Shown here: one piece after another, positions 3,855 through 31,651 of the stretch
How positions within the stretch are numbered: position 1 is the first letter of the stretch
Layout: each line of letters opens with the position of its first letter
From: Macrostomum lignano
Lineage: Eukaryota
Direction: 5' to 3'
Assembly (NCBI GenBank): GCA_002269645.1
Contig: NIVC01001003.1
Span: 342,217-375,709, forward strand
Length of the DNA: 33,493 nt
Translations under genes and position numbers: made by a program
The notes under the pieces: model-generated
What the model saw: the letters and a program-made list of their open reading frames with translations, nothing else
Told to the model about the DNA's origin: nothing
Database searches by the model: none

Positions 3855-3874
3855 AATAGGACGTTTCTCTCCAG

Positions 3875-4490
3875 GTGGACTATCAGGGCGATTCTCTCTC
3901 AGTGGATTATCGGGGCGATTATCTCACAGTGGATTATCGGGCCGATTCACACACAGTGGATTATCGGGCGATTCTCCCACAATGGATTATCGGGGCTATT
4001 CTCTCTCAGTGGATTATCGGGGCGATTCTCTCACAGTGGACTATCGGGCGATTCTCTCTCGGTGGATTATCGGGGCGATTCTCTTTCAGTGGATTATCGG
4101 GGCGATTCTCTCAGTGGATTATCGGGACGATTCTCCCACAATGGATTATCGGGGCGATTCTCTCTCAGTGGATTATAGGGGCGATTCTCCCACAATGGAT
4201 TATCGAGGCGATTCTCTTTCAGTGGATTATCGAAGCGAGTCCCTTACAGTGGATTATCGGGGACGGGGAGATTCTCTCACAGTGGACTATCTGGGCGATT
4301 CTCTTTCAGTGGATTATCGGGGCGATTATCTCACAGTGGATTATCGGGCGATTATCTCACAGTGGATTATCGGGGCGATAATCTCACAGTGGATTATCGA
4401 GGCGATTCTCTTTCAGTGGATTATCGGGGCGAGTCCCTTACAGTGGATTATCGGGGCGATTATCTCACAGTGGATTATCGGGGCGATTCT
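3875..4490. repeat. Tandem array, ~27-bp unit CAGTGGATTATCGGGGCGATTCTCTCA
   Basis: Direct reading; lies immediately downstream of the MED23 stop codon. Confidence 0.92.
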
Positions 4491-4533
4491 CCCTAAGTCA
4501 CCGGGAGCCAGTCTTCAGACTGAGCTTTCAGAC

Positions 4534-13800: not shown

Positions 13801-16800
13801 ACTCGAAACGCAGCCAACTCCAGCCGACGCTCAGCAAAAGGCCGCATCAGCAGCACCAGCAGCAGCCGGTGCAACGGGAGCAGCCGGTGGGTGTACACCA
13901 GACTAGTCACGTGATGCAGAGCCGAAACCTCGGCATTGTCGGCCGCGCTAGCGACTTCCCTGGTGAGCAGGTCGCAGAAGATGCGCAGATGCGGCAGGGC
14001 GCCCTTTGGCCCGAGGCTCTCCTGGACTCGGGCGAACAGCTGGGCCGCTGGAAGGTCACCGCCACGCTCCCGCAGGCAGCTGAGCGCCACCCAGTACAGG
14101 CAGCCAGCTGAGGGGTCGCTTAGCTGGGCCTCATCGCACTGGCCCTCCTGCAGGATGCGCTGGCTCAGGCGGGTGGCCAGCTCGGCTGAGCCGGTCAGCT
14201 GATGCGACTGACGCTCAGCTGAGGGCACCGAGATTCTGTCCGGGCTGGCCAACAGGCGCGGCTGCATGGAGATCGGCACCTGGGGTGGGTGGAGAATGAG
14301 GAATGTGAAGGTTCTGGGATTTGAGACTATGGGATATGGGATTTGAAGCTATGTGATATGGGATTTGAGGCTATGGGATATGGGATTTGAAGCTATGTGA
14401 TATGGGATTTGGGGCTATGGGATATGGGATTTGAGGCTATGGGATATGGGATTTGAGGCTATGGGATATGGGATTTGAGGCTATGGGATATGGGATTTGA
14501 AGCTATGTGATATGGGATTTGAGGCTATGGGATATGGGATTTGAAGCTATGTGATATGGGATTTGGGGCTATGGGATATGGGATTTGAGGCTATGGGATA
14601 TGGGATTTGAGGCTATGGGATATGGGATTTGAGGCTATGGGATATGGGATTTGAAGCTATGGGATATGGGATTTGAGGCTATGGGATATGGGATTTGAAG
14701 CTATGGGATAGGGGATTTGAGGCTATGTGATATGGGATTTGAGGCTATGGGATATGGGATTGAGGCTATGGGATATGGGATTTGAAGCTATGGGATATGG
14801 GATTGAGGCTATGGAAAATGGGATTGAGGCTATGGGATATGGGATTTGAGGCTATGGGATATGGGATTAGAGGCTATAGGATATAATATTTAAGGTTATG
14901 GGATATGGGATTAGAGGCTATAGGATATAAGATTTAAGGTTATGGGATATGGGATTTAAAGCTATGTGATATATGATTTTAGGTTATGGGATATGGGATT
15001 TGAGGCATGTGTCCTTGAGCAAGACATCTTAACTCTGCACTGCTTCAGTTCACCCAGCTGTAGAATGGGTGCCATGGGTGCCCTAACCCCCCAGTCCTTA
15101 GACTGAACAGTCGTATGCAGCCTTCAGTTACGCCGCGCAATCGAAGTAATCAATTATACTGTGAATTATTACTGGGATTAAGCACAAAATGATTTACGAG
15201 TACTATTTGTTAGCAAGATATGAATACTTAGAGATGCTATAAAAGTTCATCTTGTACCAGGCATGCAGCCGAGCATTTCTGAAACAGCGGCTGAACAAAG
15301 TCGGATAGCAGCAGGCCGTCAGGATCTGCTTGCTGGTGAATCAGCTGGTGATTGATCTGCAGCAGTAGGTATTTATTCAGCTCCTCCTGGTCGCTGCCGC
15401 AGATCCAAGCCACGTACAGCTTCTTCACGTGGTTGTTGGTGACCTGGGGGGGATTGTACTAATAAGTATAACTGCATTGTACCCATTGCCTACCTGCCTA
15501 CTAATGGTATTTACTAGTCTATCTACTACCCATTATACCCCTAATAGAACTATAATTATCCCTAATCTACCCATGATATCTCTAATCTACCCATGATATC
15601 TCTAATCTACCCATGATATCTCTAATCTATCCATGATATCTCTAATCTACCCATGATATCTCTAATCTACCCATGACATCCCTAATCTACCCATTATATA
15701 CCTAATCTACCCATTATATACCTAATCTACTCATTATATCCCTAATCTACCCACTATATCCCCAATCTACCTATTATATCCCTAAGCTACACACTATATA
15801 CCAAATCTACTCATTATATCCCTAAGCTACCCACTATATACCAAATCTACCCATTATATACCTAATCTACCCATTATATACCTAATCTACCCATTATATA
15901 CCTAATCTACCCATTATATACCTAATCTTCCCATTATATCCCTAATCTACCCATTATATCCCTAATCTACCCTTTATATACCTAATCTACCCATCATATC
16001 CCTAAGCTACCCATTATATCCCTAAGCTACCCATTATATCCCTAAGCTACCCATTATATCCCTAAGCTACCCATTATATACCTAATCTACCCATTATATA
16101 CCAAATCTACCCATTATATACCTAATCTACCCAGCCCACAACCAACCTGCAGAGCGGGAGTGAGCAAGGCTTGAGCCTGCCTATACAAGCACAGCTCAGT
16201 GTCCAGCCCCAGCCGGTTAGCCTTGGCCAGAGTGACCAGGTTCTGCAGCAACAGGTGCCTCTGCATGGGTTCAACGCTGTTCAAGTGATACGTGGCCAGC
16301 TCGAACACAAAGGCCAACACTCTGCTTCCACCAGTGTTGCCAGCCTTAGTGAAGGCCTCCGTGAGTACAGATTTAGGCTGCAAATTCAAATCGTGATGCA
16401 TGAGCACAGTGATCCTGGCGTACGTGTCCAGCACCACGGGACTGTCGGCATGGGTTGACAGCAGGTTGTACAGCAGACTGTTGATAGCCAGCAGTGACAT
16501 TGTGGCTAACTGGCGTAGGCTGGAGTAAGATGGAGCAATGGCGTCTGATTGTTTGAGCGCTTCTACCAGCTTGGAGTTGAGCGGGCTGACCACCTGCGGG
16601 TCATAGGGTCATGGTCTATGATTGTGCGATCATACACTTTTCGGAACTTTGGATGAATGATTTTGGAATCATGCGATATTAACATAGGGTCATGGAATAA
16701 CGGAGATCAGTAAGGGACTTCCAAAAATGCGATTGAGAATGAGAATAGGATCATGTGACCCTGCAGAATATAATTATGGGATCATAAGAGAATGTGATCA

Positions 16801-19800
16801 TAGTCATAGAGAATGGGATCATAGGGTCATAGAGAATGGAATCATATGGTCATAGAGAATGGAATCATAGGGTCACAGAGAATGGAATCATAGGGTCATA
16901 GAGAATGGAATCATAGGGTCATAAAGAATGCGATCATAGGGTCATAGAGAATGGGATCATAGGGTCATAGAGAAGGGGATCATAGGGTCATAGAGAATGG
17001 AATCATAGGGTCATAGAGAATGGAATCATAGGGTCATAAAGAATGGGATCATAGGGTCATAGAGAATGGGATCATAGAGTCATAGAGAATGGGATCATAG
17101 TCATAGAGAATGGGATCATAGTCATAGAGAATGGGATCATAGTCATAGAGAATGGGATCATAGTCATAGAGAATGGGATCACATACATAAATATTTAAAT
17201 CATGGGATCATAGAGAATGGGATCATAGGGTCATAGAAAATGGGATCATAGAGTCATAGAGAACGGGATCAGAGTCACAGAGAACGGGATCAGAGTCATA
17301 GAGAATGGAATCATAGGGTCATAGAGAATGTGATCATAGTCATAGAGAATGGAATCATAGCGTCATAGAGAATGGGATCATAGGGTCATAGAGAATGGAA
17401 TCATAGGGTCATAGGGAAGGGGATCAGAGTCATAGAGAATGGAATTATAGGGTCATAGAGAATGGGATCAAAGTCATAGAGAATGGAATCATAGTCATAG
17501 GGAATATGATCATAGTCACACGCACGTAATGGGATTAGGGGATCAATGGGAAAACATCCCAGCGCTACAAACCTGAGGCTGACCCAGAGGCGCATAAGCA
17601 TTATAAACGTAGGCGAACCAGCGAAACTCTTCGGGATCCAGCGGGACTTGATAGCTGGGAGACTGCGACATCTGCTGGAACTTCTCCATCAGCTCTGACA
17701 TCATTGGCTGCATCGGAGGCGGCAGGGCTCGAGGCAGCCGCTCGTTGGGCGCGCTGGACTTCTGGGTGAGGCTGAACCAAACCAGCAGGGTGGTGTCAAA
17801 GGCTGGCGCCCCGCCTGGAAACAGCGCGTCAAGGATGCGCAGGATGGGAGCAAAATCTACGAGGGGATTTTTGTTTTGAGCGCCCAAGAAGTTGAACAGC
17901 ATCCAAGCGATGTGCGGCGCCGAACGGCTGAGCGAATCTCGTCGATCTTGCAGGCCTGGTTTTGGTTGAAGGGAATTGAATATTAGCGAAATGTTTGCAT
18001 TGCTACTCAGTCAGTAGAGTAGTCCAAGTATGTTGCAATATCTATCTGAGCCAGGTGAGTGTCTCAGTTGACGATATGCGAGATTAGGGAAAAATAGCTG
18101 GCATACTAAGGGATCTGGGAGGCTGACCCAGCAACTGAGGATCTGGGAGGCTGGTACAGCAACTGAGGATCTGGGAGACTGGTACAGCAACTGAGGATCT
18201 GGGAGGCTGACCCAGCAACTGAGGATCTGGGAGGCTGGTACAGCAACTGAGGATCTGGGAGGCTGGCCCAGCAACTGAGGATCTGGGAGGCTGACCCAGC
18301 AACTGAGGATCTGGGAGGCTGACCCAGCAACTGAGGATCTGGGAGGCTGGCCCAGCAACTGAGGATCTGGGAGGCTGACCCAGCAACTGAGGATCTGGGA
18401 GGCTGACCCAGAAACTGAGCTCAATACCTTCCAAAACTCCAAGGCACATCTCGGGAAAGCGCACGAGATGCAGCCGACAAAGATGGATGCTGTACAGTCC
18501 CAGATGACGCCACATCATGTCTGCCCAAGCCATCTCGCTATCGGATTCGCAGGCCTCGGTCTCGTCGGCAGTCCACAGAATGGTGTCAATCAAGCATCGC
18601 TCCAGAAACAGGCACCTGGATATCTTGCTAGCCCTTGGTGCCGTGTGCAGTGACAGAAGACTCAACAACAGGTCCATGCTGCCCTGCTGCGTGAGCACAG
18701 CCCTGATGAGGCTGGTATGCGGTCTCTGCAAGCACCTGGCATAGGGCAGGGGGCCCTTCAAATCCAGGGCGCCAGTCGAGGCCAGCAGATTCACGGGCAC
18801 ATTGGTGACGCTGCTGGGCTGCGGATGCTGCAGAATGGCCGGCGGCATGCAGTAGTTGCCAACACCGGCTATGGGAACGATTTGACGGATCACTGCGGGG
18901 GCGGAGCAGGCGGGTGAGTCATCTGCTACTCTGATCCAGCAGGAATGATTAGCAGCACCTTACCTCTGTGCGAGAACATGTTGGCAACGTTTTTGAAGCT
19001 ATTGCGAAATGTTTCCAGTTTGGTCTTTAAAATCTGAGGGAGGAAAGTTATTGAGGATCTGCTGCTGGACTGATTGTGAATTTATCGATCATTCTGTATA
19101 AAATATAGACACCCGTACGACTCTACTACGACTAGGACTACTACTACAACTTTTCTACTATTAGTCTACTACTGAAATACAGTGCCCAGTTGCCTGTGAA
19201 CAGGGTCTGAGCAGACAGTAGTCTGTAAACAGGGTCTGAGCAGACAGCAGTCTGTAAACAGGGTCTGAGCAGACAGCAGTCTGTAAACAGGGTCTGAGCA
19301 GACAGCAGTCTGTAAACAGGGTCTGAGCAGACAGCAGTCTGTAAACAGGGTCTGAGCAGACAGCAGTCTGTGAACAGGGTCTGAGCAGACAGCAGTCTGT
19401 GAACAGGGTCTGAGCAGACAGCAGTCTGTGAACAGGGTCTGAGCAGACAGCAGTCAGTGAACAGACGCCGCCAACTGCGACTCGTGACTTGTCTGGCTAC
19501 ATTAAAACAGTCTACCAGTACGACTCTACTAAGACTACGACTACTACGTCTGTGACCAGATGCCATGAACTGCTACTTGTGGCCGGTCTGGCCTACTCAA
19601 ACTAATTTAATCTCGTATGTGCATCAAATTATTTACACTTCGTTAATTAGTCAGAGTTCTCAGTGCTCTATAACAATTATTTATTTTTCTAAATAACTTA
19701 TTTGTAGTATTTTTCAAGCTGGTTAGTCACATTTCTAAGCTGTAATGCCTTAACCAGTCAGAGTGCTTTAATTCCCTCTTTGTATTAGCTATATGTACGT

Positions 19801-22800
19801 GCATTTTTACACAACACTGCTCAGTGCACCCAGCCAAAGCTGGTACATAAATAATAATGTTATGAGGAAATAACTTCACTACCAAAATAATTGCTACTTT
19901 ATATACCCTCAAAATAAACCCTGACGAAGGCCATGATTTGGCCGAAATATCGGTTATTTCAAAGTTTGACACCTGAAAACTTCAATCTTCCGTGTGCGTG
20001 GTTGCGGTTTCAGACTGTCTTATACTCGTAGATATCTCTATTTATCTATTTATCGATCTTTCGATCTATATATCCATCTATCTTTCTATCTATCTATGGA
20101 TCAAATATACTTCATTAACTACTAAACGGCAGTGCCCAGTTGTCTGTGTCCAGGGACTGAGCAGACGGTGATCTGTGTCCAGACGCCGCCCACTGATACT
20201 TGTGGCTTGCCAGGATAAACAATTAAATTACTGCATATGCATCAGTATGTAATTATTTACCCTTCTTTAACCAGTTTAAGTAAGGTCGTAGTGCTCTGTA
20301 ACAATTTAATTTACTTTAAAAACATTAGACACCAGTGAATGCGGCGGAAAGATCCTCCCAACGCTGCGCATTGAGGGACAGGAATTAACCTACGACCCGA
20401 CACCCACGTTCCTTGGCCTTCGCCTAGACGACCAACTGACTTTCGCCAACCATATAGAGGCAGTGCGCAAAAGATGGCCACCAGGCGGCGTTGTCTGCAA
20501 AGTCTCGTTGGCAAATCCCAGGAAAATACTTCATCTTATTAAAGAGGAACCAATTTTTTGAAAGAATCCGGTGATGAAGAAGTCTTGCCTACAGAGTTTT
20601 TGGTGGTGGCTGACTCAGCCCCTAATGCTGCTGCTTCTGGGCTTCCAGGCGGCCCTGCTTCTGCTGATTCTGGGCTTTCCGGCACTCCCGCTGCTGCTGC
20701 TGCCGAGGGCGCCCCTGCTGGTGTTGCTATTACTGTAAACTCCAGGGGTCCACGTGGAGTCCGTGGCCAAAAATGGCTGATTTGGAGTCCGCCCTCAATA
20801 AGCTAGAGCGCAATCCTCGGTTTGGAACGGACCTTATGTTAAAGGCGAATTTCGTCAACAAGTTTTTAACTTACATCATCAATGACGTCTTTAACAATTA
20901 TAAAAGCCGGCAAGATCCGTATCTTTATGGAAAAGAGCTAAATGACATAACCATCTCCATCGTTTCTATGTACCCAGGAATGCGAGACGGGTCGAGCGAT
21001 GGACTATTTTTTGGTGGCAGAAAATTCACCGAAGATTCGCTGCTAATTCCAGCAACTCCGGCATTTCCGCGTCGTGCATGGCGGAAAATGATGAGGATAG
21101 TGACGAAGAAAACGTAGTTTCATTTGCAAGTAAGCGCCGAAAAATTGCTACCATCGTAGATGCGTCCGATGATGACGAAAACGTAGTACAAGCAAAGCGC
21201 CTGCAAGTCAACTGTGAGGATGCTGAGAGTACGACTACATCGACAAGCAAGCTTGTCAAAAGCGTCATTTTTGGAGATGTGGAATGCGTTCCTGAAAGTC
21301 ACGAAGTTGACCGAATTAGGTTGAACAAAAATTTCCACACAATGGAAATCGAAGAGGTATTAAGCAATATGAAAAGTCTATTTAGTGTGCGAGTCGTGCG
21401 TTGCCAAGAGAGAACTGTTGAAGAGGAGGCTGAATTGTATAAGCCATTATCACTACCACGTGTTCAGTTGCAAGAGGCATTTCTTATGATTCAGTTGTAT
21501 AACTCTAGACGCAAGGCTGACTATGTGTTTCCTCGAACACCTGAGGATATTGAACAAAATGTATGCGGTGCACTCCGGCATGTGTGGCAAGAACGAGATG
21601 CAATGAAGCGGTACTTGTACTGCTAGCCGTTTCTGAACGCTGAATGTGATAACGACGACACCATTCTAATAAACGGCCTTTGCCTGCACCTTGATCGATT
21701 AAGGATTGACCCTGCGAAACTTTTTTGATACTGAGCTGCCAATTGAAATTCTGAAGGAAGGCGAAAGTAATTGCAATCTGTTCCGTATCGTTTACCTGCA
21801 GCATGTGCCCTATCTGGAAGCCTCCCTCGAGACGTATTAGAAGTATTGTGAAAACTCCCTCGACGTGATGCTGTGTCCTGCGCACCTTCCCAGTCGCTGA
21901 TTGCTATACTTCGTTAATAAAACTTTAACTTAGCATTCGACATTTTATTCGTATAATGAAAGTCTATGTTCCCCCTTAAACACCACCTAAGCTTAAGGTT
22001 TATTAATGTCTCCACTAATAAAAAACCCTTTAAACTTACCTTAATAAGTTTAACCCAATTACCGGCTACCTTAATAAACAAATGACAATTTTTCTTAATA
22101 CAGAATTGATACTGCATAGCTATTTTTATACTGTTTATTCTTATATTAAGCTGAAGCTTGTAAATGGTATTGTCTGCAGCACTGGATCACTCATTTATAT
22201 ATAAAATCATGTATGACATTATAAAATATAAACAATATTTTTATAAAGTAATGTTTTTTTATAATGTTTGCATCTAATTTTCGTGTAGTTCCATGTAATT
22301 TTTGCATACTTTTTGACGTTGACGTAATAATTGAAATACTTTCATGCGTGTGTATGTATGTTGTATTAGTATTTCACGTTGCGAAAAAATAATAAAACAC
22401 CAAGTAATGAGTGTATGTCAATATACACTGCATGTGATAATTATAATACGATAGGGAGCATTTATCTGGCAGACAGATATTAGTGTTGTAATTCATGGTT
22501 ACAAATTCAAGACTTGCATATCGTATAATTTTCTTCTTGTCAGTGATTTTTTTCGTATTATAATACAAAAATGATGGGTGTTCTCGATTGTGTACATTAA
22601 CTTTTTATTAAAAAGAATTTGCATCAGTTGATCTAACTTCTAAGCGTGCGAAAGCCAATAAATCTGAATTTAGCTAGTCAACCTTGCAAACGAAACTACG
22701 CTCGTACATGCGGACCCTTCTTGCATTCGACCTTTAGGGTCCGTATATAGCGACGCCGCGGACCCTAACATACGGACCCCTGCCGGACCTTTTTTCGAAC

Positions 22801-25800
22801 CCATACATTCGGACCTTTAGGGTCCGTATATAGCGACGCCGCGGACCTTAACATACGGACCCCTGCCGGACCTTTTTTCGAACCCATACATTCGGACCTT
22901 TAGGGTCCGTATATAGCGACGCCGCGGACCCTAACATACGGACCCCTACTTGACCTTTTTTCGGATCCATACATTCGGACATTTGGGGTGTAGCGACGCC
23001 GCGGACCTAACATACCGACCCCTACTTGACCTTTTTTCGGATCCATACATTCGGACATTTGGGGTGAGCGACGCCGCGGACCTAACATACCGACCCCTAC
23101 TTGACCTTTTTTCGGATCCATACATTCGGACATTTAGGGTCCGTATATAGCGACGCCGCGGACCCTAACATACGGAACCCTACTGGACCTTTTTCGGATC
23201 CATACATTCGGACATTTGGGGTGAGCGACGCCGTGGACCTAACATACCGACCCCTACTTGACCTTTTTTCGGATCCATACATTCGGACATTTGGGGTGTA
23301 GCGACGCCGCGGACCCTAACATACTGACCCCTACTGGACCTTTTTTCGGATCCATACATTCGGACATTTAGGGTCCGTATATAGCGACGCCGCGGACCCT
23401 AACATACGGACCCCTACTGGACCTTTTTTCGGATCCATACATTCGGACATTTGGGGTGTAGCGACGCCGCGGACCTAACATACCGACCCCTACTTGACCT
23501 TTTTTCGGATCCATACATTCGGACATTTAGGGTCCGTATATAGCGACGCCGCGGACCCTAACATACGGACCCCTACTGGACCTTTTTCGGATCCATACAT
23601 TCGGACATTTGGGGTGAGCGACGCCGCGGACCTAACATACCGACCCCTACTTGACCTTTTTTCGGATCCATACATTCGGATATTTGGGGTGAGCGACGCC
23701 GCGGACCTAACATACCGACCCCTACTTGACCTTTTTTCGGATCCATACATTCGGACATTTGGGGTGAGCGACGCCGCGGACCTAACATACCGACCCCTAC
23801 TGGACCTTTTTTCGGATCCATACATTCGGATATTTAGGGTCCGTATATAGCGACGCCGCGGACCCTAACATACGGACCCCTACTGGACCTTTTTCGGATC
23901 CATACATTCGGACATTTGGGGTGAGCGACGCCGCGGACCTAACATACCGACCCCTACTTGACCTTTTTTCGGATCCATACATTCGGACATTTGGGGTGAG
24001 CGACGCCGCGGACCTAACATACCGACCCCTACTTGACCTTTTTTCGGATCCATACATTCGGAAATTTGGGGTGTAGCGACGCCGCGGACCTAACATACCG
24101 ACCCCTACTTGACCTTTCTTCGGATCCATACATTCGGACATTTGGGGTGTAGCGACGCCGCGGACCCTAACATACCGACCCCTACTTGACCTTTTTTCGG
24201 ACCCATACATTCGGACATTTAGGGTCCGTATATAGCGACGCCGCGGACCCTAACATACGGACCCCTACTGGACCTTTTTCGGATCCATACATTCAGACAT
24301 TTAGGGTGTAGCGACGCCGCGGACCCTAACATACCGACCAATACTTGACCTTTTTGGATCCCTGGGGTTTACAGTGTACAATTGAGCCGGTGGAGCCAAT
24401 TCCTGATTGAATCAAGGAGTCTGATCAGACTATCGTGGCGGCAAATATTCTACCCGGCGTGTCGTTTTCCTACCGCCTGTCAGCGGTGCCGGGTATGCAG
24501 TGACTTAGAAGAACATATATATTTTATTTCCCACTAACAATATAAATTCGTTGCATTTTGTTATTAATAATTATACTAAGAACCCTGACGAAGGCCAATC
24601 CACAGCCGAAGTATCGGTTCACTAAATTGATTTATATTAGTTATGACCTCTGCGTCTCTCTTTGATATTTCTTGGCTAACTTAGTTAGAGCTGCTAATGT
24701 GTGAGTGGTCTTTTTCAAACGTCTATTTATCTATCAATGAATCAAATATACTTCATCAACTACTGAACGGCACTGCCCAGTTGTCTGTGTCCAGGGACTG
24801 AGCAGAAAGTGGTCTACTCGTATGTCCAGACGCCGCCAACTGATAGCCTGATAGTTTGATAGCCTAAGTGAGGTCTCAGTGCTCTATAACAATTTAATTT
24901 ACTTTTTTTAAAACGTATTCATTATACCTTTCAAGCTGTTTAGTCACACTTTAATAATCGTTCAATGTGACTTTATATAGCTCCTAATGCCTATAATTTT
25001 TTGTGTGAGGCATTAGCCGCAAAGCTCTAACCAATCAGTGTGCTTTAATACACTTTTTACACAACACTGTTTAGTGCACCCAGACAAAGCTGGTGTATAA
25101 ATAACCTGGTTATGATGCAATAACTTCACTGTCAAAATTTTATTTTCTTTTAACCTGACGAAGGCCACGATTTTGCCGAAATATTGGTAGTTTTGAAGAA
25201 AAGTACGACTTCTGATTTCTGCTTTATTCATATTTATCGATAGAATAGATATCGATAGCTGGTGAAACCCGCAAATCGCAGCATCAGCAGCAGTCAAACC
25301 GTCGGAGACCTGATACCCAGTACCATCTTCGGAGGGATGGGCGCCGGTCAAGGTCGCAAGACAGAGGCTCTGAGAATGTCACCATCATTGTACTCGTACT
25401 CGTAAACGTCGAAGTGCGAAAGGTGCGATGACAGTAGACAATGCCCGGCTGGTTCGGTTGGTCAAGAAACTCTTCCCGATCTGTTCATCACTATGAAAAC
25501 TGTCAGACCATCCCAAAATAACTGCAAAGCAAAACAGAACAACTCAAGACTTTTATTCGACCGGCCATGCCAACCAAGAGGACTGAGGAGAACGTCCGAT
25601 TGAACGCAGACACCTGAGATGTGAGCACCCAGGACGCAATGCAAAGTCATTGTGAAGAATGAATCTTTTGAACGACTTCCACAATTAAGGGAAGCGTTCA
25701 AGGGAGTCGACAGCGAAAGACGGTTCAACTGTGACTCGACGGTGTTACGGTAAGTTACGAATTGTGTTTGAAAAAAATGGAACTTGGAAATCCTCTATAA

Positions 25801-28188
25801 AAGACATTCTGTGCCCATCCAAACCCCGTGCACTGACTGCACGTGGTCAAGCCGGGTTAGTTCATCAGTTTATCTCTCATCGCTGCGCTCCCATCACTTC
25901 TAACAATTTATTGATTTTAATGTCCCCAGCAAACTCTTTTTGAGTGCTCATATTTTATAAACCATTGCTTTACTGTTTCTCGCAAAACAAATTTTCGGAC
26001 CCTGACGAAAGCTACGATTTGGCCGAAAATTTGGTCTAGTTTATAAACAAATCAAATTGTACCTTCTCTCACTGTGTGTGCGGTTTTTTAATTGATTTCG
26101 TCTTTCTATCTATCTATCTATCTATAAATCAGCCCAGCAGCCTCACCGGATGCAGATTGGTCTGCTCAGCCGGGGGCAGTTTAGTCACTTCGTGCAGAGC
26201 AAAATAGGCGGGCATCAGGCAAAGCGAGCGATCCATCAGGGTGGTGATGAGCTGCGGGTTCAGTGGGTGTCACAGACAGTTATAAAGCAATAAATAATTT
26301 CGAGTTGTAGCTCGTAAGTAAGATAAATATTTGATTTAAAAGAAATCGACAGTAAGCAACTTTATTACACACGGGTAAACTTCTAAATCTTACTAAAGCT
26401 TCAATAAATTCCATAGAAATTCTCTACTTATTTCTTGTATTTATTAGCCTCAATTGTCGGAAAAAAAAACAACTTGTACAGTTGAAAGCGTCATTTGTAG
26501 GATTCCAAAGGCGCCATTTGTTGAATTTTAAAAGCGCCATTTGTGAGAATTAAAAAACGAAATTTTTAGGATTTAAAAAGCGCCATTTGTAGGCTTTAAA
26601 AAGTGCCATTTGTTGAATTTAAAAGGCGCCATTTGTGAGATTTAAAAGCGTTGTTAAACAAACAAAACAATATTGCAACAAACCTTGAACGCAGGAACAA
26701 AGACTTTGTCTTCACCTTCGCTGAAAGTCTTGTACAAGCCCAACACTTTTCCAAACAGATCCCTGCAGCCTTTGTAGTCCATCTGTCTGACCAGACGATC
26801 CATCACTGTCACGGCCTCTTTAAAGAAGGCCGGATTTCGCATGATATCGTCGTGAGAGACCAACAACTCGTCACAGATGTGCCTGAGTAGGGGGTGATTT
26901 TCGTTCGGGGCGACACTTTGAAACTGAGTTTTATAAACTGGGCAAAACGAACCGAATAACTCAGCCTTAATGAATCCATGAACAGCTAACTCATTCATGA
27001 TGTGAAAGTGTGAGAGAGCATCTTAATAATAGATGTTGTACACCATTTATTGTAACCAAGCAAACATTACTGAAAGGCACTAACTTGGCAGACAGTAATC
27101 CGCTGTTAATAAGCGGATAAAATACTTCCAGACAGCTGACTAACACGCGATCAAGGAACTCCTCCATGACGTGGCTGATGTACAGTTTCACTGCTCGTTT
27201 GCGGTCCTCCTGAAAGTTGAGAATGTACTTTTTTGAAGACGAAAAATCTTTTTTCAGGACCTTCAACGGTTTGCTAAACTTTGTCCCTGAACCTTTAGTG
27301 GACTGCTCAGCCTTGTCCCTGAACCTTTAGTGGACTGCTAACCCTTGTTGCTGAACCTTTAGTGGACTGCTAACCCTTGTTGCTGAACCTTTAGTGGACT
27401 GCTAATTCTTGTCCCTGAACCTTCAGTAGCCTATTCAGTCTTGCCCCTGAACCTTCAGTAGCCTACTCAGTCTTGTCCCTGAACCTTCAGCAGCCTACTC
27501 AGTCTTGTCCCTGAACCTTCAGTAGCCTATTCAGTCTTGCCCCTGAACCTTCAGTAGCCTACTCAGTCTTGTCCCTGAACCTTCAGCAGCCTACTCAGTC
27601 TTGTCCCTGAACCTTCAGTAGCCTACTCAGTCTTGCCCCTGAACCTTCAGTAGCCTATTCAGTCTTGCCCCTGAACCTTCAGTAGCCTACTCAGTCTTGT
27701 CCTTGAACCTTTAGTAGCCTACTCAGTCTTGTCCTTGAACCTTCAGTGGCCTATACAGTATTGTTCCTGAACCTTCAGCGGTCTGTTAACTCTTGTCCCT
27801 GAGCTTCCAGTGGTTGCTAACTCTTGTCCCTGAACCTTCAGTGTCTGTTAACTCTTGTCCCTGAGCTTCCAGTGGTTGCTAACTCTTGTCCCTGAACCTT
27901 CAGTGTCTGTTAACTCTTGTCCCTGAGCTTCCAGTGGTTGCTAACTCTCGTCCCTGAACCTTGTCACTGAACCTCCCGTGAACTGCTAACCATTTTCCTT
28001 GATCCTCCTCAATAAAAACTCACCAGATTAAAAGGCCGAAAGGTGTCGATCACATAGCTAGGCAAAAAGCTGTCAGCATCCCCAGCAAGATAGCTGTTCT
28101 CGCTGGCAGAATTTGGCGAAGACTGACTGCCACTTAGTCGCTGGTATGAGCCCAGCCGATACAGAGCAATGTCAGACACATGGTTCTC
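4534..28188 (-). CDS. MED23: Mediator complex subunit 23 (spliced CDS; first ATG exon not located). join(complement): 28024-28188, 27085-27260, 26684-26882, 26147-26251, 18964-19033, 18428-18892, 17573-17955, 16147-16593, 15258-15443, 13732-14279, 11068-11967, 5818-6013, 4534-4884
   Basis: Colinear motifs matching MED23 as I recall it: MDYKGCRDLF (VDYKGVRDLL), DRSLCLMPAYFAL (ERNACLLPAYFAV), QEELNKYLL (SEELNRALI), FPQLDWFGHEWPSSCSHAVNCCALQL (FPNCDWRFNEFPNPAAHALHVTCVEL), ADYFYHIKYMFVGD (CDFLYHMKYMFTGD). All junctions are GT-AG with matching phases; total 4191 nt, no internal stop. Confidence 0.93.
4925..5770. repeat. Intronic tandem array, 39-bp unit GGTACGGGATCTGGGATTCTGAGGGTATGGGATTCTTGG
   Basis: Direct reading; 13-aa periodicity in the spurious ORFs. 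Confidence 0.93.
5818..6013 (-). CDS. MED23: MED23 exon 12 of 13 traced
   Basis: Acceptor cccatag|G, donor AAG|gtgact; AYLSHAGPGRVAQLPVFF aligns to AVWHHSSIGQLSLIPKFL. Confidence 0.88.
6406..6618 (-). repeat. 3' LTR (213 bp)
   Basis: Direct repeat of 10480-10693; preceded on the element strand by the PPT GGGAAGGAG (6619-6627). Confidence 0.95.
6697..9062 (-). CDS. Gypsy pol: reverse transcriptase, RNase H, integrase
   Basis: SEWATPIVCV..., LDLTNAYLQ, YQDD, TDASPVGLGAVL, NYAQIEREAL, HHCC zinc finger, DDE motifs (HADYAG / VTDNGPQF / NGLAERF). Disconnected from the protease by a small deletion at ~9063-9068. Confidence 0.92.
9063..10467 (-). pseudogene. Gypsy gag-protease region with two frameshifts
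   Basis: Gag starts MATIPIEPL; capsid-like WLQRFE...LRDQFVFGL; two CCHC knuckles (CFCCGKDGHRKDVC, CLNCGKTGHLKAVC); protease MDTGS. Frame breaks near 9961-9966 and 9842-9846. Confidence 0.88.
10464..10478 (-). other. Primer-binding site TGGTGACGAGGATGG (tRNA-Ser(GCT)-type)
   Basis: Lies 1 nt after the 5' LTR; complementary (one G:U pair) to the ...CCAUCCUCGUCG-CCA 3' end known for animal tRNA-Ser(GCU). Confidence 0.75.
10480..10693 (-). repeat. 5' LTR (214 bp)
   Basis: Differs from the 3' LTR by 3 substitutions and a 1-nt indel; contains overlapping AATAAA on the element strand. Confidence 0.95.
11068..11967 (-). CDS. MED23: MED23 exon 11 (900 nt, phase 2-2)
   Basis: Acceptor ccgcccgcag|C, donor AG|gttggt; contains the FPQLDW...HAVNCCALQL and WQSAGLLLAQMP motifs. 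Confidence 0.88.
12170..13670. repeat. Intronic tandem array, 20-bp unit CATGAGGTATCATTTAGGGT, interrupted at 12982-13240
   Basis: Direct reading. Confidence 0.93.
12982..13226 (+). mobile_element. Probable solo LTR (245 bp)
   Basis: Unique AT-rich insert in the 20-bp array with TGTTAA...TTAACA termini and AATAAA near the right end; no TSD found. Confidence 0.45.
13732..14279 (-). CDS. MED23: MED23 exon 10
   Basis: Acceptor ccccag|GTG, donor AG|gtagct; LVYTHRLLPLHRLLLVLLMR aligns to MVWKYNIVTLDRLILCLAMR. Confidence 0.88.
14315..15005. repeat. Intronic tandem array, 22-bp unit GGGATATGGGATTTGAGGCTAT
   Basis: Direct reading. Confidence 0.93.
15008..15069 (+). mobile_element. CORE-SINE (MIR-like CORE domain) fragment
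   Basis: TGTGTCCTTGAGCAAGACATCTTAAC...TCAGTTCACCCAGCTGTAGAATGGG aligns with the MIR CORE consensus (GTGACCTTGGGCAAGTCACTTAAC...TCAGTTTCCTCATCTGTAAAATGGG); no tRNA-derived head seen. Confidence 0.7.
15258..15443 (-). CDS. MED23: MED23 exon 9
   Basis: Acceptor ccccag|GTC, donor CTG|gtacaa; SDQEELNKYLLLQI motif. Confidence 0.85.
15555..16130. repeat. Intronic tandem array, 20-bp unit CCTAATCTACCCATTATATA
   Basis: Direct reading. Confidence 0.93.
16147..16593 (-). CDS. MED23: MED23 exon 8
   Basis: Acceptor cgcag|GTG, donor CAG|gttggt; LDTYARI and FELATYHL motifs (VETYSRL, LEMFSYRM). Confidence 0.88.
16800..17515. repeat. Intronic tandem array, 23-bp unit CATAGGGTCATAGAGAATGGGAT
   Basis: Direct reading. 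Confidence 0.92.
17573..17955 (-). CDS. MED23: MED23 exon 7
   Basis: Acceptor accag|GC, donor CAG|gtttgt; AWMLFNFLGAQNKNPLVDFAPILRILDALFP aligns to MWVLLQFISGSIQKNALADFLPVMKLFDLLYP. Confidence 0.88.
18105..18420. repeat. Intronic tandem array, 28-bp unit CAGCAACTGAGGATCTGGGAGGCTGACC
   Basis: Direct reading; explains the repetitive tail of ORF 18084..18893. Confidence 0.93.
18428..18892 (-). CDS. MED23: MED23 exon 6
   Basis: Acceptor ccccgcag|TG, donor G|gtattg; LPY...LIRAVLTQ...WRHL motifs. Confidence 0.88.
18964..19033 (-). CDS. MED23: MED23 exon 5 (70 nt; ILKTKLETFRNSFKNVANMFSHR)
   Basis: Not in the ORF track. Acceptor cctccctcag|ATT, donor G|gtaagg; phases bridge exons 4 and 6; aligns to LLGNLVSDFVDTFRPTARINSIC. 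Confidence 0.85.
19195..19462. repeat. Tandem array, 29-bp unit TCTGTAAACAGGGTCTGAGCAGACAGCAG
   Basis: Direct reading; an expansion of a segment of the ribozyme-bearing module. Confidence 0.92.
19912..19959 (+). ncRNA. Minimal type-I hammerhead ribozyme motif HHR1 (best-formed copy)
   Basis: AACC-CTGACGA-A-GGCCA(tgatt)TGGCC-GAA-ATAT-C^GGTT: stem I AACC/GGTT, core CUGANGA, 5-bp stem II, GAAA, palindromic helix III AUAU, predicted cut after the AUC at 19951. Confidence 0.8.
20325..20519 (+). pseudogene. Non-LTR retrotransposon (I-group LINE-like) RT C-terminal fragment
   Basis: Hand translation LRIEGQELTYDPTPTFLGLRLDDQLTFANHIEAVRK, then (after a 1-nt shift at the A-run ~20469-20472) KMATRRRCLQSLVGKS. 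This fits the LINE motif FLG-x-LD-xx-LTF-xx-HI...R...L..L.G. Confidence 0.75.
20520..21900 (+). pseudogene. Broken intronless ORF of unknown function (~450 codons if repaired), likely a transposon accessory gene
   Basis: ORFs 20558-20806, 20773-21117 and 21078-21626 lie in three successive frames. The T6 run at 21007-21012 links MYPGMRDGSSDGLF to WWQKIHRRFAAN. Coding-like sequence continues past TAG 21624-21626, T6 21721-21726 and TAG 21838-21840 to TGA 21900. Confidence 0.55.
22730..24355. repeat. Satellite array with ~75-bp and ~83-bp unit variants (GACCTTTTTTCGGATCCATACATTCGGACATTT...GCGACGCCGCGGACC...)
   Basis: Direct reading; 25-aa periodicity in the spurious ORFs. Confidence 0.92.
24580..24620 (+). 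ncRNA. Hammerhead motif HHR2 (core variant GAAG)
   Basis: GAACC-CTGACGA-A-GGC(caatccaca)GCC-GAAGTATC^GGTTC; 5-bp stem I; A15.1->G change, probably impaired. Confidence 0.65.
25151..25189 (+). ncRNA. Hammerhead motif HHR3 (degenerate stems)
   Basis: TAAC-CTGACGA-A-GGC(cacgatttt)GCC-GAA-ATAT-T^GGTA; core intact, one mismatch in stem I. Confidence 0.6.
25997..26037 (+). ncRNA. Hammerhead motif HHR4
   Basis: GGACC-CTGACGA-A-AGCTA(cgatt)TGGCC-GAA-AATT-T^GGTCT; stem I GACC/GGTC, palindrome AAUU, mismatch at the base of stem II. Confidence 0.6.
26147..26251 (-). CDS. MED23: MED23 exon 4 (LITTLMDRSLCLMPAYFALHEVTKLPPAEQTNLHP)
   Basis: Not in the ORF track. Acceptor cccgcag|CTC, donor CCG|gtgagg; strong match to the LLPAYFAV motif. 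Confidence 0.9.
26485..26650. repeat. Short intronic array, ~24-bp unit AAAAGCGCCATTTGTAGGATTTA
   Basis: About six degenerate copies read directly. Confidence 0.8.
26684..26882 (-). CDS. MED23: MED23 exon 3
   Basis: Acceptor ctactcag|G, donor AAG|gtttgt; DYKGCRDL motif. Confidence 0.9.
27085..27260 (-). CDS. MED23: MED23 exon 2 (acceptor position uncertain)
   Basis: Donor AA|gttagt; LINSGLLSAK aligns to AVETGLLPPR. The phase-0 acceptor gttgaag|GTC was chosen to match exon 1. Confidence 0.75.
27280..27965. repeat. Intronic tandem array, ~32-bp unit CTTGTCCCTGAACCTTCAGTAGCCTACTCAGT
   Basis: Direct reading; three sub-blocks of variant units. Confidence 0.92.
28024..28188 (-). CDS. MED23: Probable MED23 exon 1 of those traced (ENHVSDIALYRLG...FRPFNL)
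   Basis: Acceptor ttgacag|GAG, donor CTG|gtgagt, 55 open codons. Sequence similarity is weak; the assignment rests on position and phase. Confidence 0.65.
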
Positions 28189-28869: not shown

Positions 28870-29510
28870 CCGGGACATGGGGAATGGGGGGTTTTAGGGT
28901 GGGAAGAATCTTCATGGGGATTGATTTTACCTACTTAAACTTTAATAGAGGCATGGGGGTCTATTGAAGATTAGATAGGTAAATTCTGAACCCAAGGGGG
29001 GGGGTCTGATCAGAGGGGGGGGTGGGGTGGGCCGATAACTACCAACTACTGGGATAGGGAATGGGGGGGTTTAGGGTAAGGAGAATCTTCATGGGGATTG
29101 ATTTTACCTACTTAAACTTTAATAGAGGCATGGGGGTCTATTGAAGATTAGATAGGTAAATTCTGAACCCAAGGGGGGGGTCTGATCAGAGGGGGGGGGG
29201 TGGGGTGGGCCGATAACTACCAACTACTGGGATAGGGAATGGGGGGTTTAGGGTAAGGAGAATCTTCATGGGGATTGATTTTACCTACCTAAACTTCAAT
29301 AGAGGCATGGGGTCTATTGAAGATTAGATAGGTAAATTCTGAACCCAAGGGGGGGGTCTGATCAGAGGGGGGGGGTGGGGTGGGCCGATAACTACCAACT
29401 ACTGGGATAGGGAATGGGGGGGTTTAGGGTAAGGAGAATCTTCATGGGGATTGATTTTACCTACCTAAACTTCAATAGAGGCATGGGGGTCTATTGTAGA
29501 TTAGGTAGAT
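28870..29510. repeat. ~3.5 tandem copies of a ~177-bp G-rich unit
   Basis: GAATCTTCATGGGG anchors at 28906, 29083, 29260, 29436. Confidence 0.92.
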
Positions 29511-30184
29511 AAATTTGGAGACTGAGGGGTCCAGGGTGGAAATGTAATGAAGCTTAAGTAAAACATTCAGCAAGTTATCAAATACCTCCATTAAGAAAAA
29601 ATTATAATCTTATCAAACTAATTGATATAAGCAGCTATAGTTACCATTGAGAATAGAGAAAAAAATGCAGATTAGTAGAAATTAAGTATAGGCAAACAAG
29701 TAAAGAATGTACAGTTAGTCACAACCATGAGAGAACAACAGCAAATCAAAAGCAGGAGGTGAAGGTGGTGGTGAACCAGGAGTCAGCATTTTTTAAAAAC
29801 ACAAATTTGATGTGGCACTCTCCATGCACTATAACAAACTGAGTGAAGAAAAATTAGAATAGACACTCCTTTTATTAGAGTTAAAAATCTAACCTCCTAA
29901 ATGTTTTTTAGAGTGAACTAGCAATCTAGTGTGGCTGTGGCCCCCCTTTGGGGCACCCAATAAGCAAGGAGCAAAAATAGTTCATGGAAAGAAAAATGAA
30001 AAGAGCACATTTTCTTAAACACCAATTCCATCTTCAGTTTAAAAAATCACCTTATTCATGGAAAATTTTCACAGACAATGATGTTTGCTATGAATCTCTT
30101 TTTCCAAAATCAACAAACAGACAACAAAATATAGCTTTCACAAAGATAAAAGACATTCCCCTAAATAGAAAATATTCCTAAGAA

Positions 30185-31368: not shown

Positions 31369-31651
31369 CATACATGTGCAACAGTCGGCCGAGTCGACCG
31401 ATTTGGCGGCCAACCAAAGAAGTTGCAAAAATGCCCACCCGAAAAAAACCAAAGTAGTAGTACTAAGTAGCTGACGAGGCATTTTGGCTTAATAATACAG
31501 TTATAGTTACTCCTGCCGTTTACCCAAAGTTGTGGTTATTTTACTTTAGGGTTTTTTACATGTAAGTTGCATTTTTGGCCAAAAACTACGTCGCATTTTT
31601 GTTAAAACTAAGTTGCACGGCCGACCGAATTTTGGAGGTTGCACATGTATG
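31369..31651. mobile_element. hAT-type MITE (283 bp)
   Basis: Perfect 14-bp TIR CATACATGTGCAAC / GTTGCACATGTATG; perfect 8-bp TSD GTGCAACC (31361-31368, 31652-31659); internal inverted GTCGGCC/GGCCGAC motifs. Confidence 0.88.

What the first reader, a model, noticed from the sequence alone, without database searches (positions are those of the whole stretch)
19180..26125. Intronic cluster of four minimal hammerhead ribozymes punctuating a cargo-carrying composite element
Four CUGACGA-A-stemII-GAA-N4-H^stemI motifs (cores at 19921, 24585, 25155, 26002) lie on the same strand inside one MED23 intron. They have the minimal type-I architecture known from Penelope-like element pseudo-LTRs and metazoan retrozymes: extra A after A9, and a loopless palindromic helix III that needs dimerisation. 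The copies covary in structure: stem I AACC/GGTT vs GAACC/GGTTC vs GACC/GGTC, and helix-III palindrome ATAT -> AATT. Segments between predicted cut sites are 4664, 570 and 847 nt and contain unrelated cargo. The layout resembles a small, RT-less analogue of HHR-punctuated multi-cargo PLE assemblies such as bdelloid Terminons. Inference: a non-autonomous ribozyme-delimited retroelement system that packages and moves DNA fragments.
Basis: partly seen in the sequence, partly recalled or inferred. Interest (0 to 1): 0.9.

Follow-up and report, generated by a model that had tools for sequence, protein, structure and literature searches.

The report
Decayed hammerhead retroelement pile-up in intron
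Four related copies of a small self-cleaving-RNA (hammerhead) motif typical of Penelope-like retrotransposons do sit in one MED23 intron, but they are stacked, mostly decayed non-autonomous retroelement copies, and the largest "cargo" between them is a broken DNA transposon, so this is an ordinary transposon pile-up.

Summary
The observation mostly holds. Four homologous minimal type-I hammerhead (HHR) motifs lie on the + strand at 19921, 24585, 25155 and 26002. All are inside one MED23 intron (19035-26146) and antisense to the gene. Predicted cut sites are 4664, 570 and 847 nt apart. Only HHR1 is fully canonical; HHR2 has A15.1>G, HHR3 an A.G mismatch in helix I, and HHR4 an A.C mismatch at 10.1-11.1. 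Covariation in helix I and at 15.2-16.2 is real.

Rfam finds none of the four. It also misses equivalent HHRs that flank a Penelope-like (PLE) RT in a control contig. A custom covariance model ranks exactly these four sites first.

The "cargo-carrying composite" reading is not supported.
- The 4.7-kb segment is mainly a 5'-truncated, pseudogenised DNA transposon (20767-24376).
- That transposon belongs to a CACTG...CAGTG-terminated, two-ORF family found as intact insertions in Macrostomum lignano, and it ends at its own conserved terminus.
- The informative unit boundaries fall at the tail or (TCTA)n, 77-146 nt past the cut sites.
- No PLE RT or endonuclease is in the window.

Best reading: head-to-tail, non-autonomous PLE-type elements with a nested insertion and a deletion. 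These are new members of a known kind; interest is low.

The parts
19917..19955 (+). HHR1: intact minimal type-I hammerhead. Layout: AACC / CUGACGA / A / GGCCA-UGAUU-UGGCC / GAA / AUAU / C17 / GGUU. Predicted cut between 19951 and 19952.
   Evidence: It is the only site that passes the strict descriptor. Custom covariance model: 37.7 bits, E 1.6e-9. A 49-nt monomer folds into helices I and II.
24580..24620 (+). HHR2: a hammerhead homologue with a core mutation, A15.1>G (GAAG). Helix I is 5 bp (GAACC/GGUUC), helix II only 3 bp, and N4 is GUAU. Predicted cut between 24615 and 24616.
   Evidence: (35.4 bits). That it is inactive is inferred from the known requirement for A15.1-U16.1 (my own knowledge).
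25150..25190 (+). HHR3: the catalytic core is intact. Helix I has an A.G mismatch at 2.2-1.2 and a compensatory U-A at 2.4-1.4. Helix II has 3 bp. H17 is U at 25185.
   Evidence: (34.6 bits).
25997..26037 (+). HHR4: the catalytic core is intact. Helix I is GGACC/GGUCU with a compensatory G-C at 2.4-1.4. The helix III palindrome is AAUU. There is an A.C mismatch at 10.1-11.1. H17 is U at 26032.
   Evidence: (18.0 bits, E 0.003).
19100..20097 (+). Unit A: a full-length HHR-bearing non-autonomous element. It contains an internal 29-bp minisatellite expansion (19194-19464), HHR1, an ~85-nt tail and a (TCTA)n tract at 20037-20097. The 5' limit is approximate (19096-19150).
   Evidence: Self-BLAST homology to units B and C; TRF; alignment of unit starts.
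20098..20330 (+). Unit B: only the 5' ~230 nt of an A/B/C-type unit, 86-90% identical to unit C. Its 3' part, including its HHR, is missing.
20333..20766 (+). Unassigned junction segment. It shows weak, non-significant RT-like and linker-like similarities.
   Evidence: Pfam and PDB give no hit. The one tblastn match to a PLE RT has E=0.06.
20767..24376 (+). 5'-truncated, pseudogenised copy of a CACTG...CAGTG-terminated two-ORF DNA transposon (CACTA/Mirage-like). Components: second-ORF pseudogene 20767-21914 (frameshifts near 21010, 21725 and 21850; stop at 21624); an AT-rich spacer; subterminal GGACC repeats expanded to ~20 copies of 75 nt (22733-24355); terminus TTACAGTG at 24369-24376, followed by TA.
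   Evidence: homology to M. lignano CIDE-N proteins. (repeat homology and linkage). (sharp conserved termini with unrelated flanks). (weak Tnp2 hits in the first ORF).
24379..24745 (+). Unit X: 206 nt of unassigned sequence, then HHR2, a tail and a short TCTA-like tract. It is not the missing 3' part of unit B.
   Evidence: No significant similarity to units A or C upstream of the HHR.
24746..25262 (+). Unit C: a compact (517 nt), full-length A/B/C-type unit with HHR3 and a short tail that lacks a clean (TCTA)n.
25263..26125 (+). Unit E4: a ~730-nt body that is at best remotely related to A/B/C, followed by HHR4, a tail and (TCTA)5. It ends 21 nt from the MED23 splice donor.
19035..26146 (-). 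The MED23 intron that hosts the whole cluster. Only about 61 + 21 nt of it is not repeat-derived. Flanking exons are 26147-26250 and 18968-19034.

Best explanation
The locus is a pile-up of at least five head-to-tail copies (A, B, X, C, E4) of non-autonomous, Penelope-like-element (PLE)-type retroelements. They lie in a formerly short (~80 nt) MED23 intron, antisense to the gene.

Each complete copy has a variable body, then a minimal dimer-dependent type-I hammerhead, then an ~80-100-nt tail, then a (TCTA)n tract.

Inferred life cycle, taken from the literature on PLEs and retrozymes:
- Multimeric or read-through transcripts are cut by paired hammerheads.
- The RNA is copied in trans by an autonomous PLE RT/GIY-YIG enzyme encoded elsewhere in the genome.
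- New copies insert preferentially into the microsatellite or AT-rich tail of resident copies, which stacks units head-to-tail.

Inferred history here:
- A CACTA/Mirage-like DNA transposon later inserted at a TA dinucleotide in or next to unit X.
- One deletion then removed the 3' part of unit B and the 5' ~3.5 kb of the transposon.
- Internal repeats of unit A and of the transposon expanded into minisatellites.

What is shown: the four HHR homologues and their covariation; the homology between units and their boundaries; the identity and terminus of the transposon fragment; the intron context.

What is inferred: mobilisation by a PLE; microsatellite targeting; the order of events; that the array is now inert (one intact HHR of four).
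For: HHR identity:
- Strict descriptor: 1 hit against 0.007 expected per shuffled window.
- The custom covariance model's top four hits are exactly the four sites, all on the + strand.
- Covariation across the four copies. Between HHR1 and HHR4 there are 2 compensatory changes among 10 differences and none in the core. A random-substitution simulation gives P=0.022 for two or more compensatory changes, and P=0.0013 if the core must also stay untouched.

PLE link:
- The architecture matches the features of PLE min-HHRs in PMC4209133.
- The same core and architecture occur twice, 6023 nt apart, around an RT ORF in L010 and next to homologous RTs in L009, L026, L029 and L034. Many relatives of that RT carry a GIY-YIG domain.
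- Head-to-tail partial tandems, tails, microsatellite insertion bias, and non-autonomous derivatives that share 3' ends are described for PLEs (PMC8557442). Retrozymes as PLE derivatives are described in the 2026 bioRxiv preprint.

Unit structure:
- A/B/C homology is 70-90%, with B-C closer to each other than either is to A.
- All clean (TCTA)n runs of three or more repeats in the window sit at unit ends.
- The body of E4 and the region upstream of HHR2 in X differ from A/B/C.

Nested transposon:
- ORF 21078-21626 has homologues only among M. lignano CIDE-N-domain proteins and two unnamed proteins from a metagenome and a Logan assembly.
- A family HMM maps a frameshifted pseudogene to 20767-21914.
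- In five loci the gene follows a homologous ~800-aa ORF and is followed by GGACC repeats. The repeats are homologous to the window's 75-bp satellite in three of the five, and they end in TTACAGTGT in three of the five plus the window. Beyond the conserved CAGTG terminus, which is present in all five, the sequences are unrelated.
- The 5' ends start sharply at CACTGTAA followed by GGTCC repeats. L036 and L037 carry identical elements in different flanks.

No PLE RT or endonuclease in the window: 121 query proteins, best E=0.06.
Against: - No other genomic copy of the HHR units could be retrieved, so mobility, family size and the autonomous partner are unverified.
- Rfam hammerhead models give no hit. 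The control shows that they also miss PLE-flanking min-HHRs.
- All identifiable pieces in the 4.7-kb segment are in the + orientation. Template-switch capture would predict this too, although antisense bias of intronic TEs also explains it.
- Segment 20333-20766 and segment 24379-24584 remain unassigned.
- The single-deletion scenario is parsimonious but has not been demonstrated.
- Cleavage activity is untested, and metazoan min-HHRs cleave poorly in vitro (PMC4209133).
Confidence: 0.72

Rival explanations
1. The HHR + tail + (TCTA)n module is a portable retrotransposition signal, and the RT switches templates during cDNA synthesis. Heterologous RNAs are therefore captured upstream of the module and moved as HHR-delimited cargo. 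Here these would be a transposon transcript, the possible RT fragment and the E4 body. The result would be an RT-less analogue of Terminons.
For: - Three different 'bodies' sit upstream of a homologous 3' module.
- Unit B keeps an intact 5' end but lacks its 3' end, and the transposon fragment is 5'-truncated. A cDNA that jumped from one template to another would look like this.
- Every identifiable piece is on the + strand.
Against: - The transposon fragment runs to the element's exact DNA terminus, TTACAGTG followed by TA. That is the hallmark of a DNA-level transposase insertion. A captured transcript would be expected to end near the poly(A) signal at about 21917, upstream of the subterminal repeats.
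- Where boundaries can be placed precisely (the C/E4 junction and the array end), they are at the tails or (TCTA)n, not at the cut sites.
- HHR2, which would delimit the cargo, has a core mutation.
- There is no RT, no telomeric repeat and no second copy of the composite in any sequence reachable here.
Confidence: 0.1
2. The array arose from a single insertion of a multimeric cDNA, made by rolling-circle reverse transcription of a circular retrozyme RNA. It then diverged in place and was interrupted. This would make it a classical non-LTR retrozyme tandem array.
For: - The units are arranged head-to-tail and each carries an HHR.
- Retrozyme consensus lengths of up to 972 bp have been reported.
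- Tandem cDNA synthesis has been proposed for retrozymes (PMC7229834).
Against: - The units are heterogeneous. B-C identity is 86-90% but A-B and A-C are 70-81%.
- The bodies of X and E4 are not alignable to A/B/C.
- Compensatory changes between the HHRs point to divergence under selection in different source copies, not to neutral decay in place.
- The HHRs are of the min-HHR (PLE) type, not the canonical loop-loop type I found in retrozymes.
Confidence: 0.12
3. The motifs are host-exapted intronic ribozymes that regulate MED23 pre-mRNA, or they are chance look-alikes with no ribozyme ancestry.
For: Conserved intronic HHRs exist in amniote genes (mentioned in PMC7229834). Rfam models do not recognise these motifs.
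Against: - The motifs are antisense to MED23, so they are absent from its pre-mRNA.
- They sit inside repeated element copies.
- The chance expectation is 0.007 per window, and covariation supports the fold.
Confidence: 0.03

Closest known systems
Minimal hammerheads (min-HHR) of metazoan Penelope-like element pseudo-LTRs, and the dispersed solo copies derived from them (Cervera & de la Pena 2014, PMC4209133)
   Same: - Type I topology with a helix I of 4-5 bp and no defined loop 1.
- An unpaired nucleotide between A9 and G10.1, and a G10.1-C11.1 pair.
- No helix III beyond a palindromic 15.1-16.1 tetranucleotide, which implies dimerisation.
- High sequence variability with compensatory changes.
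- Most genomic copies are solo or truncated and lack an RT.
- Known in flatworms (Schistosoma Cercyon).
   Different: - No autonomous PLE is present in the window.
- Helix II here is 5 bp at most, whereas 7-8 bp is reported for the Schistosoma families.
- Each unit ends in a (TCTA)n tract.
Non-autonomous PLE derivatives and animal non-LTR retrozymes (PMC7229834; bioRxiv 10.64898/2026.07.22.740005; non-autonomous Chlamys elements in PMC8557442)
   Same: RT-less units of a few hundred nt up to ~1 kb, each with a type-I HHR, arranged head-to-tail. The 3' module is shared between families with different bodies. The presumed mobilisation is by a PLE RT acting in trans.
   Different: - Retrozymes carry canonical loop-loop type-I HHRs in near-identical tandem monomers of about 170-400 nt.
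- Here the HHRs are of the minimal type and the units are heterogeneous (70-90% identity or unalignable).
- The array is interrupted by an unrelated transposon.
Terminons / Athena elements of bdelloid rotifers (as summarised in PMC8557442 and PMC7229834)
   Same: Several min-HHR motifs lie in the same orientation, separating blocks of unrelated sequence.
   Different: Terminons are giant telomeric elements. They carry endonuclease-less Athena RTs, several intact ORFs, and reverse-complement telomeric repeats next to the HHRs. Here there is no RT, no telomeric repeat and an intronic location, and the 'cargo' is a broken DNA transposon.
CACTA/Mirage/Chapaev (CMC) DNA transposons. This applies to the nested element, not to the HHR units.
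   Same: CACTG...CAGTG termini; arrays of subterminal direct repeats in opposite orientation at the two ends; two ORFs; a 2-bp direct TA or TG repeat flanking each copy; weak Tnp2 (PF02992) similarity in the first ORF.
   Different: The second ORF carries an N-terminal CIDE-N domain. The transposase assignment rests on sub-threshold hits (E 0.03-0.08). The window copy lacks the 5' half.

Membership tests
Hammerhead ribozyme, type I minimal (PLE-type) | Catalytic core: C3-U4-G5-A6-N7-G8-A9, G12-A13-A14, an A15.1-U16.1 pair, and H17 | tested here: met
   Met in HHR1, HHR3 and HHR4. HHR2 has G at 15.1, so it fails.
Hammerhead ribozyme, type I minimal (PLE-type) | Helices I and II flank the core in the type-I arrangement and are supported by covariation | tested here: met
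   HHR1 has 4 bp in helix I and 5 bp in helix II. Across the four copies 87.5% of cells are paired. Three pairs, including 2.4-1.4 and 15.2-16.2, show changes on both sides, and slid registers collapse. Each of HHR2, HHR3 and HHR4 has one or two weakened pairs.
Hammerhead ribozyme, type I minimal (PLE-type) | [quoted passage not shown] | tested here: met
   The extra A is present in all four. G10.1-C11.1 is present in three of four (A.C in HHR4). 15.2-16.2 is U-A in three copies and A-U in one.
Hammerhead ribozyme (Rfam families RF00163, RF00008, RF02275-7) | A match to a curated covariance model | tested here: not met
   There is no hammerhead hit at gathering threshold or at E<=10. The control weakens this result: the min-HHRs that flank a PLE RT in L010, L011, L026 and L034 are missed as well, so the test is uninformative for this subclass.
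Hammerhead ribozyme | Site-specific self-cleavage, here presumably as a dimer | not testable with these tools
   This needs in vitro transcription of monomeric and dimeric constructs. The predicted dimer MFE of HHR1 favours a competing 17-nt near-palindromic duplex rather than the HHR dimer.
Autonomous Penelope-like element | An ORF encoding a PLE/TERT-like RT, with or without a GIY-YIG endonuclease | tested here: not met
   tblastn of the L010 RT and 120 homologues against the window gives a best E of 0.06. The only RT in the window belongs to a Ty3/gypsy element at 6697-9042.
Non-autonomous PLE derivative | Its 3' module (HHR plus tail) is shared with an autonomous PLE of the same genome | not testable with these tools
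   The source genome is not in any searchable collection. The only support is by analogy with L010.
Non-LTR retrozyme | Tandem array of near-identical short monomers, each with a canonical type-I HHR, expressed as circRNA | tested here: inconclusive
   Head-to-tail units are present, but they are 517-1000 nt long, share 70-90% identity or are unalignable, and carry the minimal rather than the canonical HHR. Expression is not testable.
Terminon | Athena-type RT, several ORFs, HHRs adjacent to reverse-complement telomeric repeats, and a telomeric location | tested here: not met
   There is no RT and no telomeric repeat. The locus is a MED23 intron.
CMC (CACTA/Mirage/Chapaev) DNA transposon (the nested element) | CACT[A/G] terminal inverted repeats, subterminal repeats, a short target-site duplication, and a Tnp2-type transposase | tested here: inconclusive
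   The termini, the subterminal repeats and a 2-bp flanking direct repeat are shown in 4-5 loci. The transposase family rests on two sub-threshold PF02992 hits. The window copy retains only the 3' terminus.

The most novel reading that the evidence does not exclude
The HHR + tail + (TCTA)n module acts as a transferable 3' retrotransposition signal. Through template switching by a PLE RT, it mobilises heterologous upstream sequence, so that units with unrelated bodies (A/B/C, E4, X and even the transposon-containing segment) are products of a ribozyme-tagged transduction system in a macrostomid flatworm.
Probability: 0.1. Interest if true: 0.6.

Novelty: new member of a known kind. Interest (0 to 1): 0.22.

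Why it matters
As it stands, this adds one more set of PLE-type minimal hammerheads, probably in a macrostomid flatworm. It also shows how such elements stack head-to-tail at their microsatellite tails and can inflate an ~80-nt intron to 7 kb. That is useful for annotation but not surprising.

It also makes a methodological point. Rfam hammerhead models miss this subclass entirely, so a negative Infernal/Rfam result cannot refute a min-HHR.

The by-product may be the more original observation: a recently mobile CACTG-terminated DNA transposon family in Macrostomum whose second ORF carries a CIDE-N domain.

Only if the composite were shown to move as a unit would the cargo idea become interesting.

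Tried and rejected
- Rfam cmscan on the whole window, on the region at E<=10, and on an 81-nt slice around HHR1: no hammerhead hit. This was rejected as a refutation after the L010 control.
- Word-indexed protein searches with the 182-aa ORF and with a MED23 exon: no hits. The exhaustive HMMER search was needed to find relatives of the ORF.
- Exact-pattern scans for the full HHR1 motif in viral and metagenome collections: 0 hits. A relaxed pattern gave 35 loci. None shares the unit body, tail or (TCTA)n with the window.
- My initial reading of 20333-20530 as a LINE RT fragment: not supported by Pfam or PDB, so it is left unassigned.
- The idea that the CIDE-N-like ORF is a processed host retrogene: rejected, because the ORF and the downstream satellite belong to a TIR-bounded transposon.
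- The idea that unit B plus 24379-24745 are two halves of one unit split by the transposon: rejected, because 24379-24584 has no similarity to the corresponding parts of A or C.
- GIY-YIG or RT remnants in the E4 body: none found.
- tRNA-like or pol III features and inverted repeats around the cluster: none.
- Exact look-up of the window's gypsy pol, to identify the source assembly: not on record.
Full report
**Context.** The window is eukaryotic. Pfam Med23 (PF11573) hits lie on minus-strand ORFs at 26654-26998, 18084-18893, 16114-16593 and 13728-14279. I inferred two small exons from their splice sites: 26147-26250 and 18968-19034. Joining them to the exon that starts at 18893 raises the Med23 score from 50.4 to 94.1 bits, with one continuous profile alignment over positions 167-355. 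The reported cluster therefore lies in one MED23 intron, 19035-26146 (7112 nt), and is antisense to the gene. A neighbouring unexpanded intron is only 75 nt long (18893-18967). Only about 61 + 21 nt of the host intron is not repeat-derived.

**The hammerheads.**
- *Layout.* All four sites share the arrangement stem I / CUGACGA / A / 15-nt stem-loop II / GAA / N4 / H / stem I'.
- *Chance.* A strict min-HHR descriptor finds only HHR1. It expects 0.007 hits per shuffled window.
- *Defects in the other three.* They are homologous copies, each with a single defect: HHR2 has A15.1>G (GAAG) and a 3-bp helix II; HHR3 has an A.G mismatch at 2.2-1.2; HHR4 has A.C at 10.1-11.1.
- *Covariation.* It is real despite there being only four copies. 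Pair 2.4-1.4 is A-U, A-U, U-A and G-C, and pair 15.2-16.2 switches from U-A to A-U. 87.5% of cells pair, and the covariation score is 0.347 against 0.147 in shuffles (3 of 500 reach it). Slid registers collapse.
- *HHR1 against HHR4.* They differ at 10 of 41 positions, with 2 compensatory pairs and no change in the core. Random substitution gives P=0.022 for two or more compensatory changes, and P=0.0013 if the core must also stay untouched. This points to selection on the fold in the source copies, not to decay in place.

**Covariance-model test.** Rfam 15 reports no hammerhead at gathering threshold, at E<=10 over 7.4 kb, or on an 81-nt slice. As a control I scanned metagenome contigs for CTGACGAAGGC-N5-12-GCCGAAATAT and obtained 35 loci.
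- L010 carries two identical motifs 6023 nt apart, around an ORF1 and an RT ORF. Homologous RTs lie next to the motif in L009, L026, L029 and L034.
- Many relatives of that RT carry a GIY-YIG domain, so these are Penelope-like elements.
- Rfam misses these HHRs too. Its negative result is therefore uninformative for this subclass.
- A covariance model built from seven metagenomic motifs ranks exactly the four window sites first: 37.7, 35.4, 34.6 and 18.0 bits, with the next hit at 11.2 bits. This test is partly circular, because I chose the seven motifs with a pattern derived from the window's own HHR core.
- The architecture matches what Cervera & de la Pena described for metazoan PLE pseudo-LTRs, including flatworms: an unpaired nucleotide after A9, G10.1-C11.1, and a palindromic 15.2-16.2 that implies dimers (PMC4209133).

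**Units.** Self-BLAST and alignments define the following head-to-tail units.
- A, ~19100-20097: it includes a 29-bp minisatellite grown from its own sequence.
- B, 20098-20330: only the 5' 230 nt of a unit.
- C, 24746-25262: a compact full-length unit.
- X, 24379-24745: it carries HHR2.
- E4, 25263-26125: it carries HHR4.

A, B and C are 70-90% identical, and B and C are closer to each other than either is to A. X and E4 share with them only the HHR, a weakly similar tail and the TCTA tract. Every clean (TCTA)n run of three or more repeats in the window sits at a unit end. The boundaries that can be placed precisely are the C/E4 junction at 25262 and the array end at 26125. Both lie at the tail or (TCTA)n, 77 and 93 nt downstream of a cut site; at unit A the (TCTA)n end lies 146 nt downstream. 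The array start (~19100) is approximate but is not at a cut site. The DNA units are therefore insertion units, not ribozyme-delimited units. No PLE RT or endonuclease is present in the window, and there is no telomeric repeat.

**The 'cargo'.**
- *Relatives of the ORF.* The 182-aa ORF at 21078-21626 had no hit in the word-indexed search. The exhaustive HMMER search found seven relatives. Five are Macrostomum lignano CIDE-N-domain proteins, one is from a JGI metagenome and one from a Logan assembly.
- *Pseudogene.* tblastn and a family HMM map a frameshifted, stop-containing pseudogene at 20767-21914 that lacks about the first 130 residues.
- *Linked features.* In four M. lignano loci and one metagenomic locus the gene is single-exon, preceded by a homologous ~800-aa zinc-finger ORF, and followed 450-900 nt downstream by a GGACC-rich repeat cluster. 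In three of these loci the cluster is detectably homologous to the window's 75-bp satellite at 22733-24340.
- *Termini.* The cluster ends in TTACAGTGT in three of the five loci and in the window. All five share the CAGTG terminus, beyond which they are unrelated. The 5' ends start equally sharply at CACTGTAA followed by inverted GGTCC repeats. L036 and L037 carry identical elements in different flanks, with TG or TA directly repeated on both sides.
- *Classification.* Two of the upstream ORFs give sub-threshold Tnp2 (PF02992) hits to the same region of the profile. This is a 6-6.7-kb CACTA/Mirage-like DNA transposon.
- *The window copy.* The window holds the 3' ~3.6 kb of the element (20767-24376). 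Its subterminal repeats have expanded to about 20 copies, and it ends at its own terminus followed by TA. A captured transcript would not be expected to extend past the poly(A) signal near 21917 to the exact transposon end. This is a DNA-level insertion.
- *History.* Because 24379-24584 is not the missing 3' part of unit B, the simplest history is insertion of the transposon in or next to unit X. One deletion then removed the 3' part of B together with the 5' half of the transposon.
- *Unassigned.* Segments 20333-20766 and 24379-24584 remain unassigned.

**Mechanism and verdict.** These are non-autonomous PLE-type retroelements. Their hammerheads were maintained in source copies and are presumed to process multimeric transcripts as dimers. 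The copies are presumed to be reverse-transcribed in trans by a PLE enzyme and to stack at microsatellite tails. Tandem or partial-tandem structure, tails, microsatellite bias and 3'-end-sharing non-autonomous derivatives are all described for PLEs (PMC8557442, PMC11167929, PMC7229834 and the 2026 bioRxiv preprint). This particular array is old and mostly decayed, with one canonical HHR of four. I leave about 10% for a template-switch or transduction reading.

Noticed in passing
window 20767-24376; L036 666-7356; L037 666-7356; L039 5933-12559; L040 204-6272: A DNA transposon family that I could not match to any named family. It is 6-6.7 kb long, with CACTGTAA...TTACAGTG termini, GGTCC/GGACC subterminal repeats, a 2-bp TA/TG flanking duplication, a ~800-aa zinc-finger ORF with weak Tnp2 similarity, and a second ORF with an N-terminal CIDE-N domain. 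L036 and L037 hold identical copies in different flanks, which suggests recent mobility in Macrostomum lignano.
   Followed up: yes
window 1-3071, 3865-4498, 4953-5751, 12160-13663, 14315-15006, 15526-16133, 16782-17515, 18111-18419, 27281-27962, 28880-29515: Much of the non-coding sequence in and around the MED23 gene is filled with long minisatellite arrays (periods 20-48 nt, and one of 177 nt), while an unexpanded intron is only 75 nt (18893-18967). The M. lignano loci show the same style. Intron growth by minisatellite expansion seems to be a feature of this genome.
   Followed up: partly
window 6697-10503 (-), flanks 6100-6406 and 10710-11002: A Ty3/gypsy retrotransposon with a long open pol ORF (781 aa: RT, RNase H, integrase) and open gag and protease ORFs. 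It is flanked on both sides by the same ~28-53-nt tandem repeat (ATGACCTCATTTGACCCCAAGAG...). Either it inserted into a minisatellite or its LTRs contain one.
   Followed up: no
L010 1-6150 (also L011, L026, L034, L009): Metagenomic Penelope-like elements with identical min-HHRs 6023 nt apart, a 711-aa ORF1 with no Pfam hit, and a 624-aa RT ORF that lacks GIY-YIG although many relatives have it. Rfam hammerhead models do not detect their HHRs.
   Followed up: partly
window 19944-19960: The 3' half of HHR1 (GAAAUAUCGGUUAUUUC) is a 17-nt near-palindrome. RNAcofold predicts that two copies form this long duplex rather than the 4-bp AUAU helix III dimer. In a 55-nt context the monomer MFE is an alternative hairpin that sequesters the cleavage site. 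This may be a conformational switch or just coincidence.
   Followed up: partly
window 20333-20614: Two short RT-like peptide similarities in different frames: ...TFLGLRLDDQLTF... and FLKESGDEEVLPTEFLVVAD, the latter against the PLE RT motif region (E=0.06). Neither is significant, and they are not colinear within a single RT.
   Followed up: partly
window 31460-31574 and L037 10771-10894: A 126-nt match at 78% identity between the window and an M. lignano contig, outside the finding. It is another repeat shared with Macrostomum, consistent with a macrostomid origin of the window.
   Followed up: no
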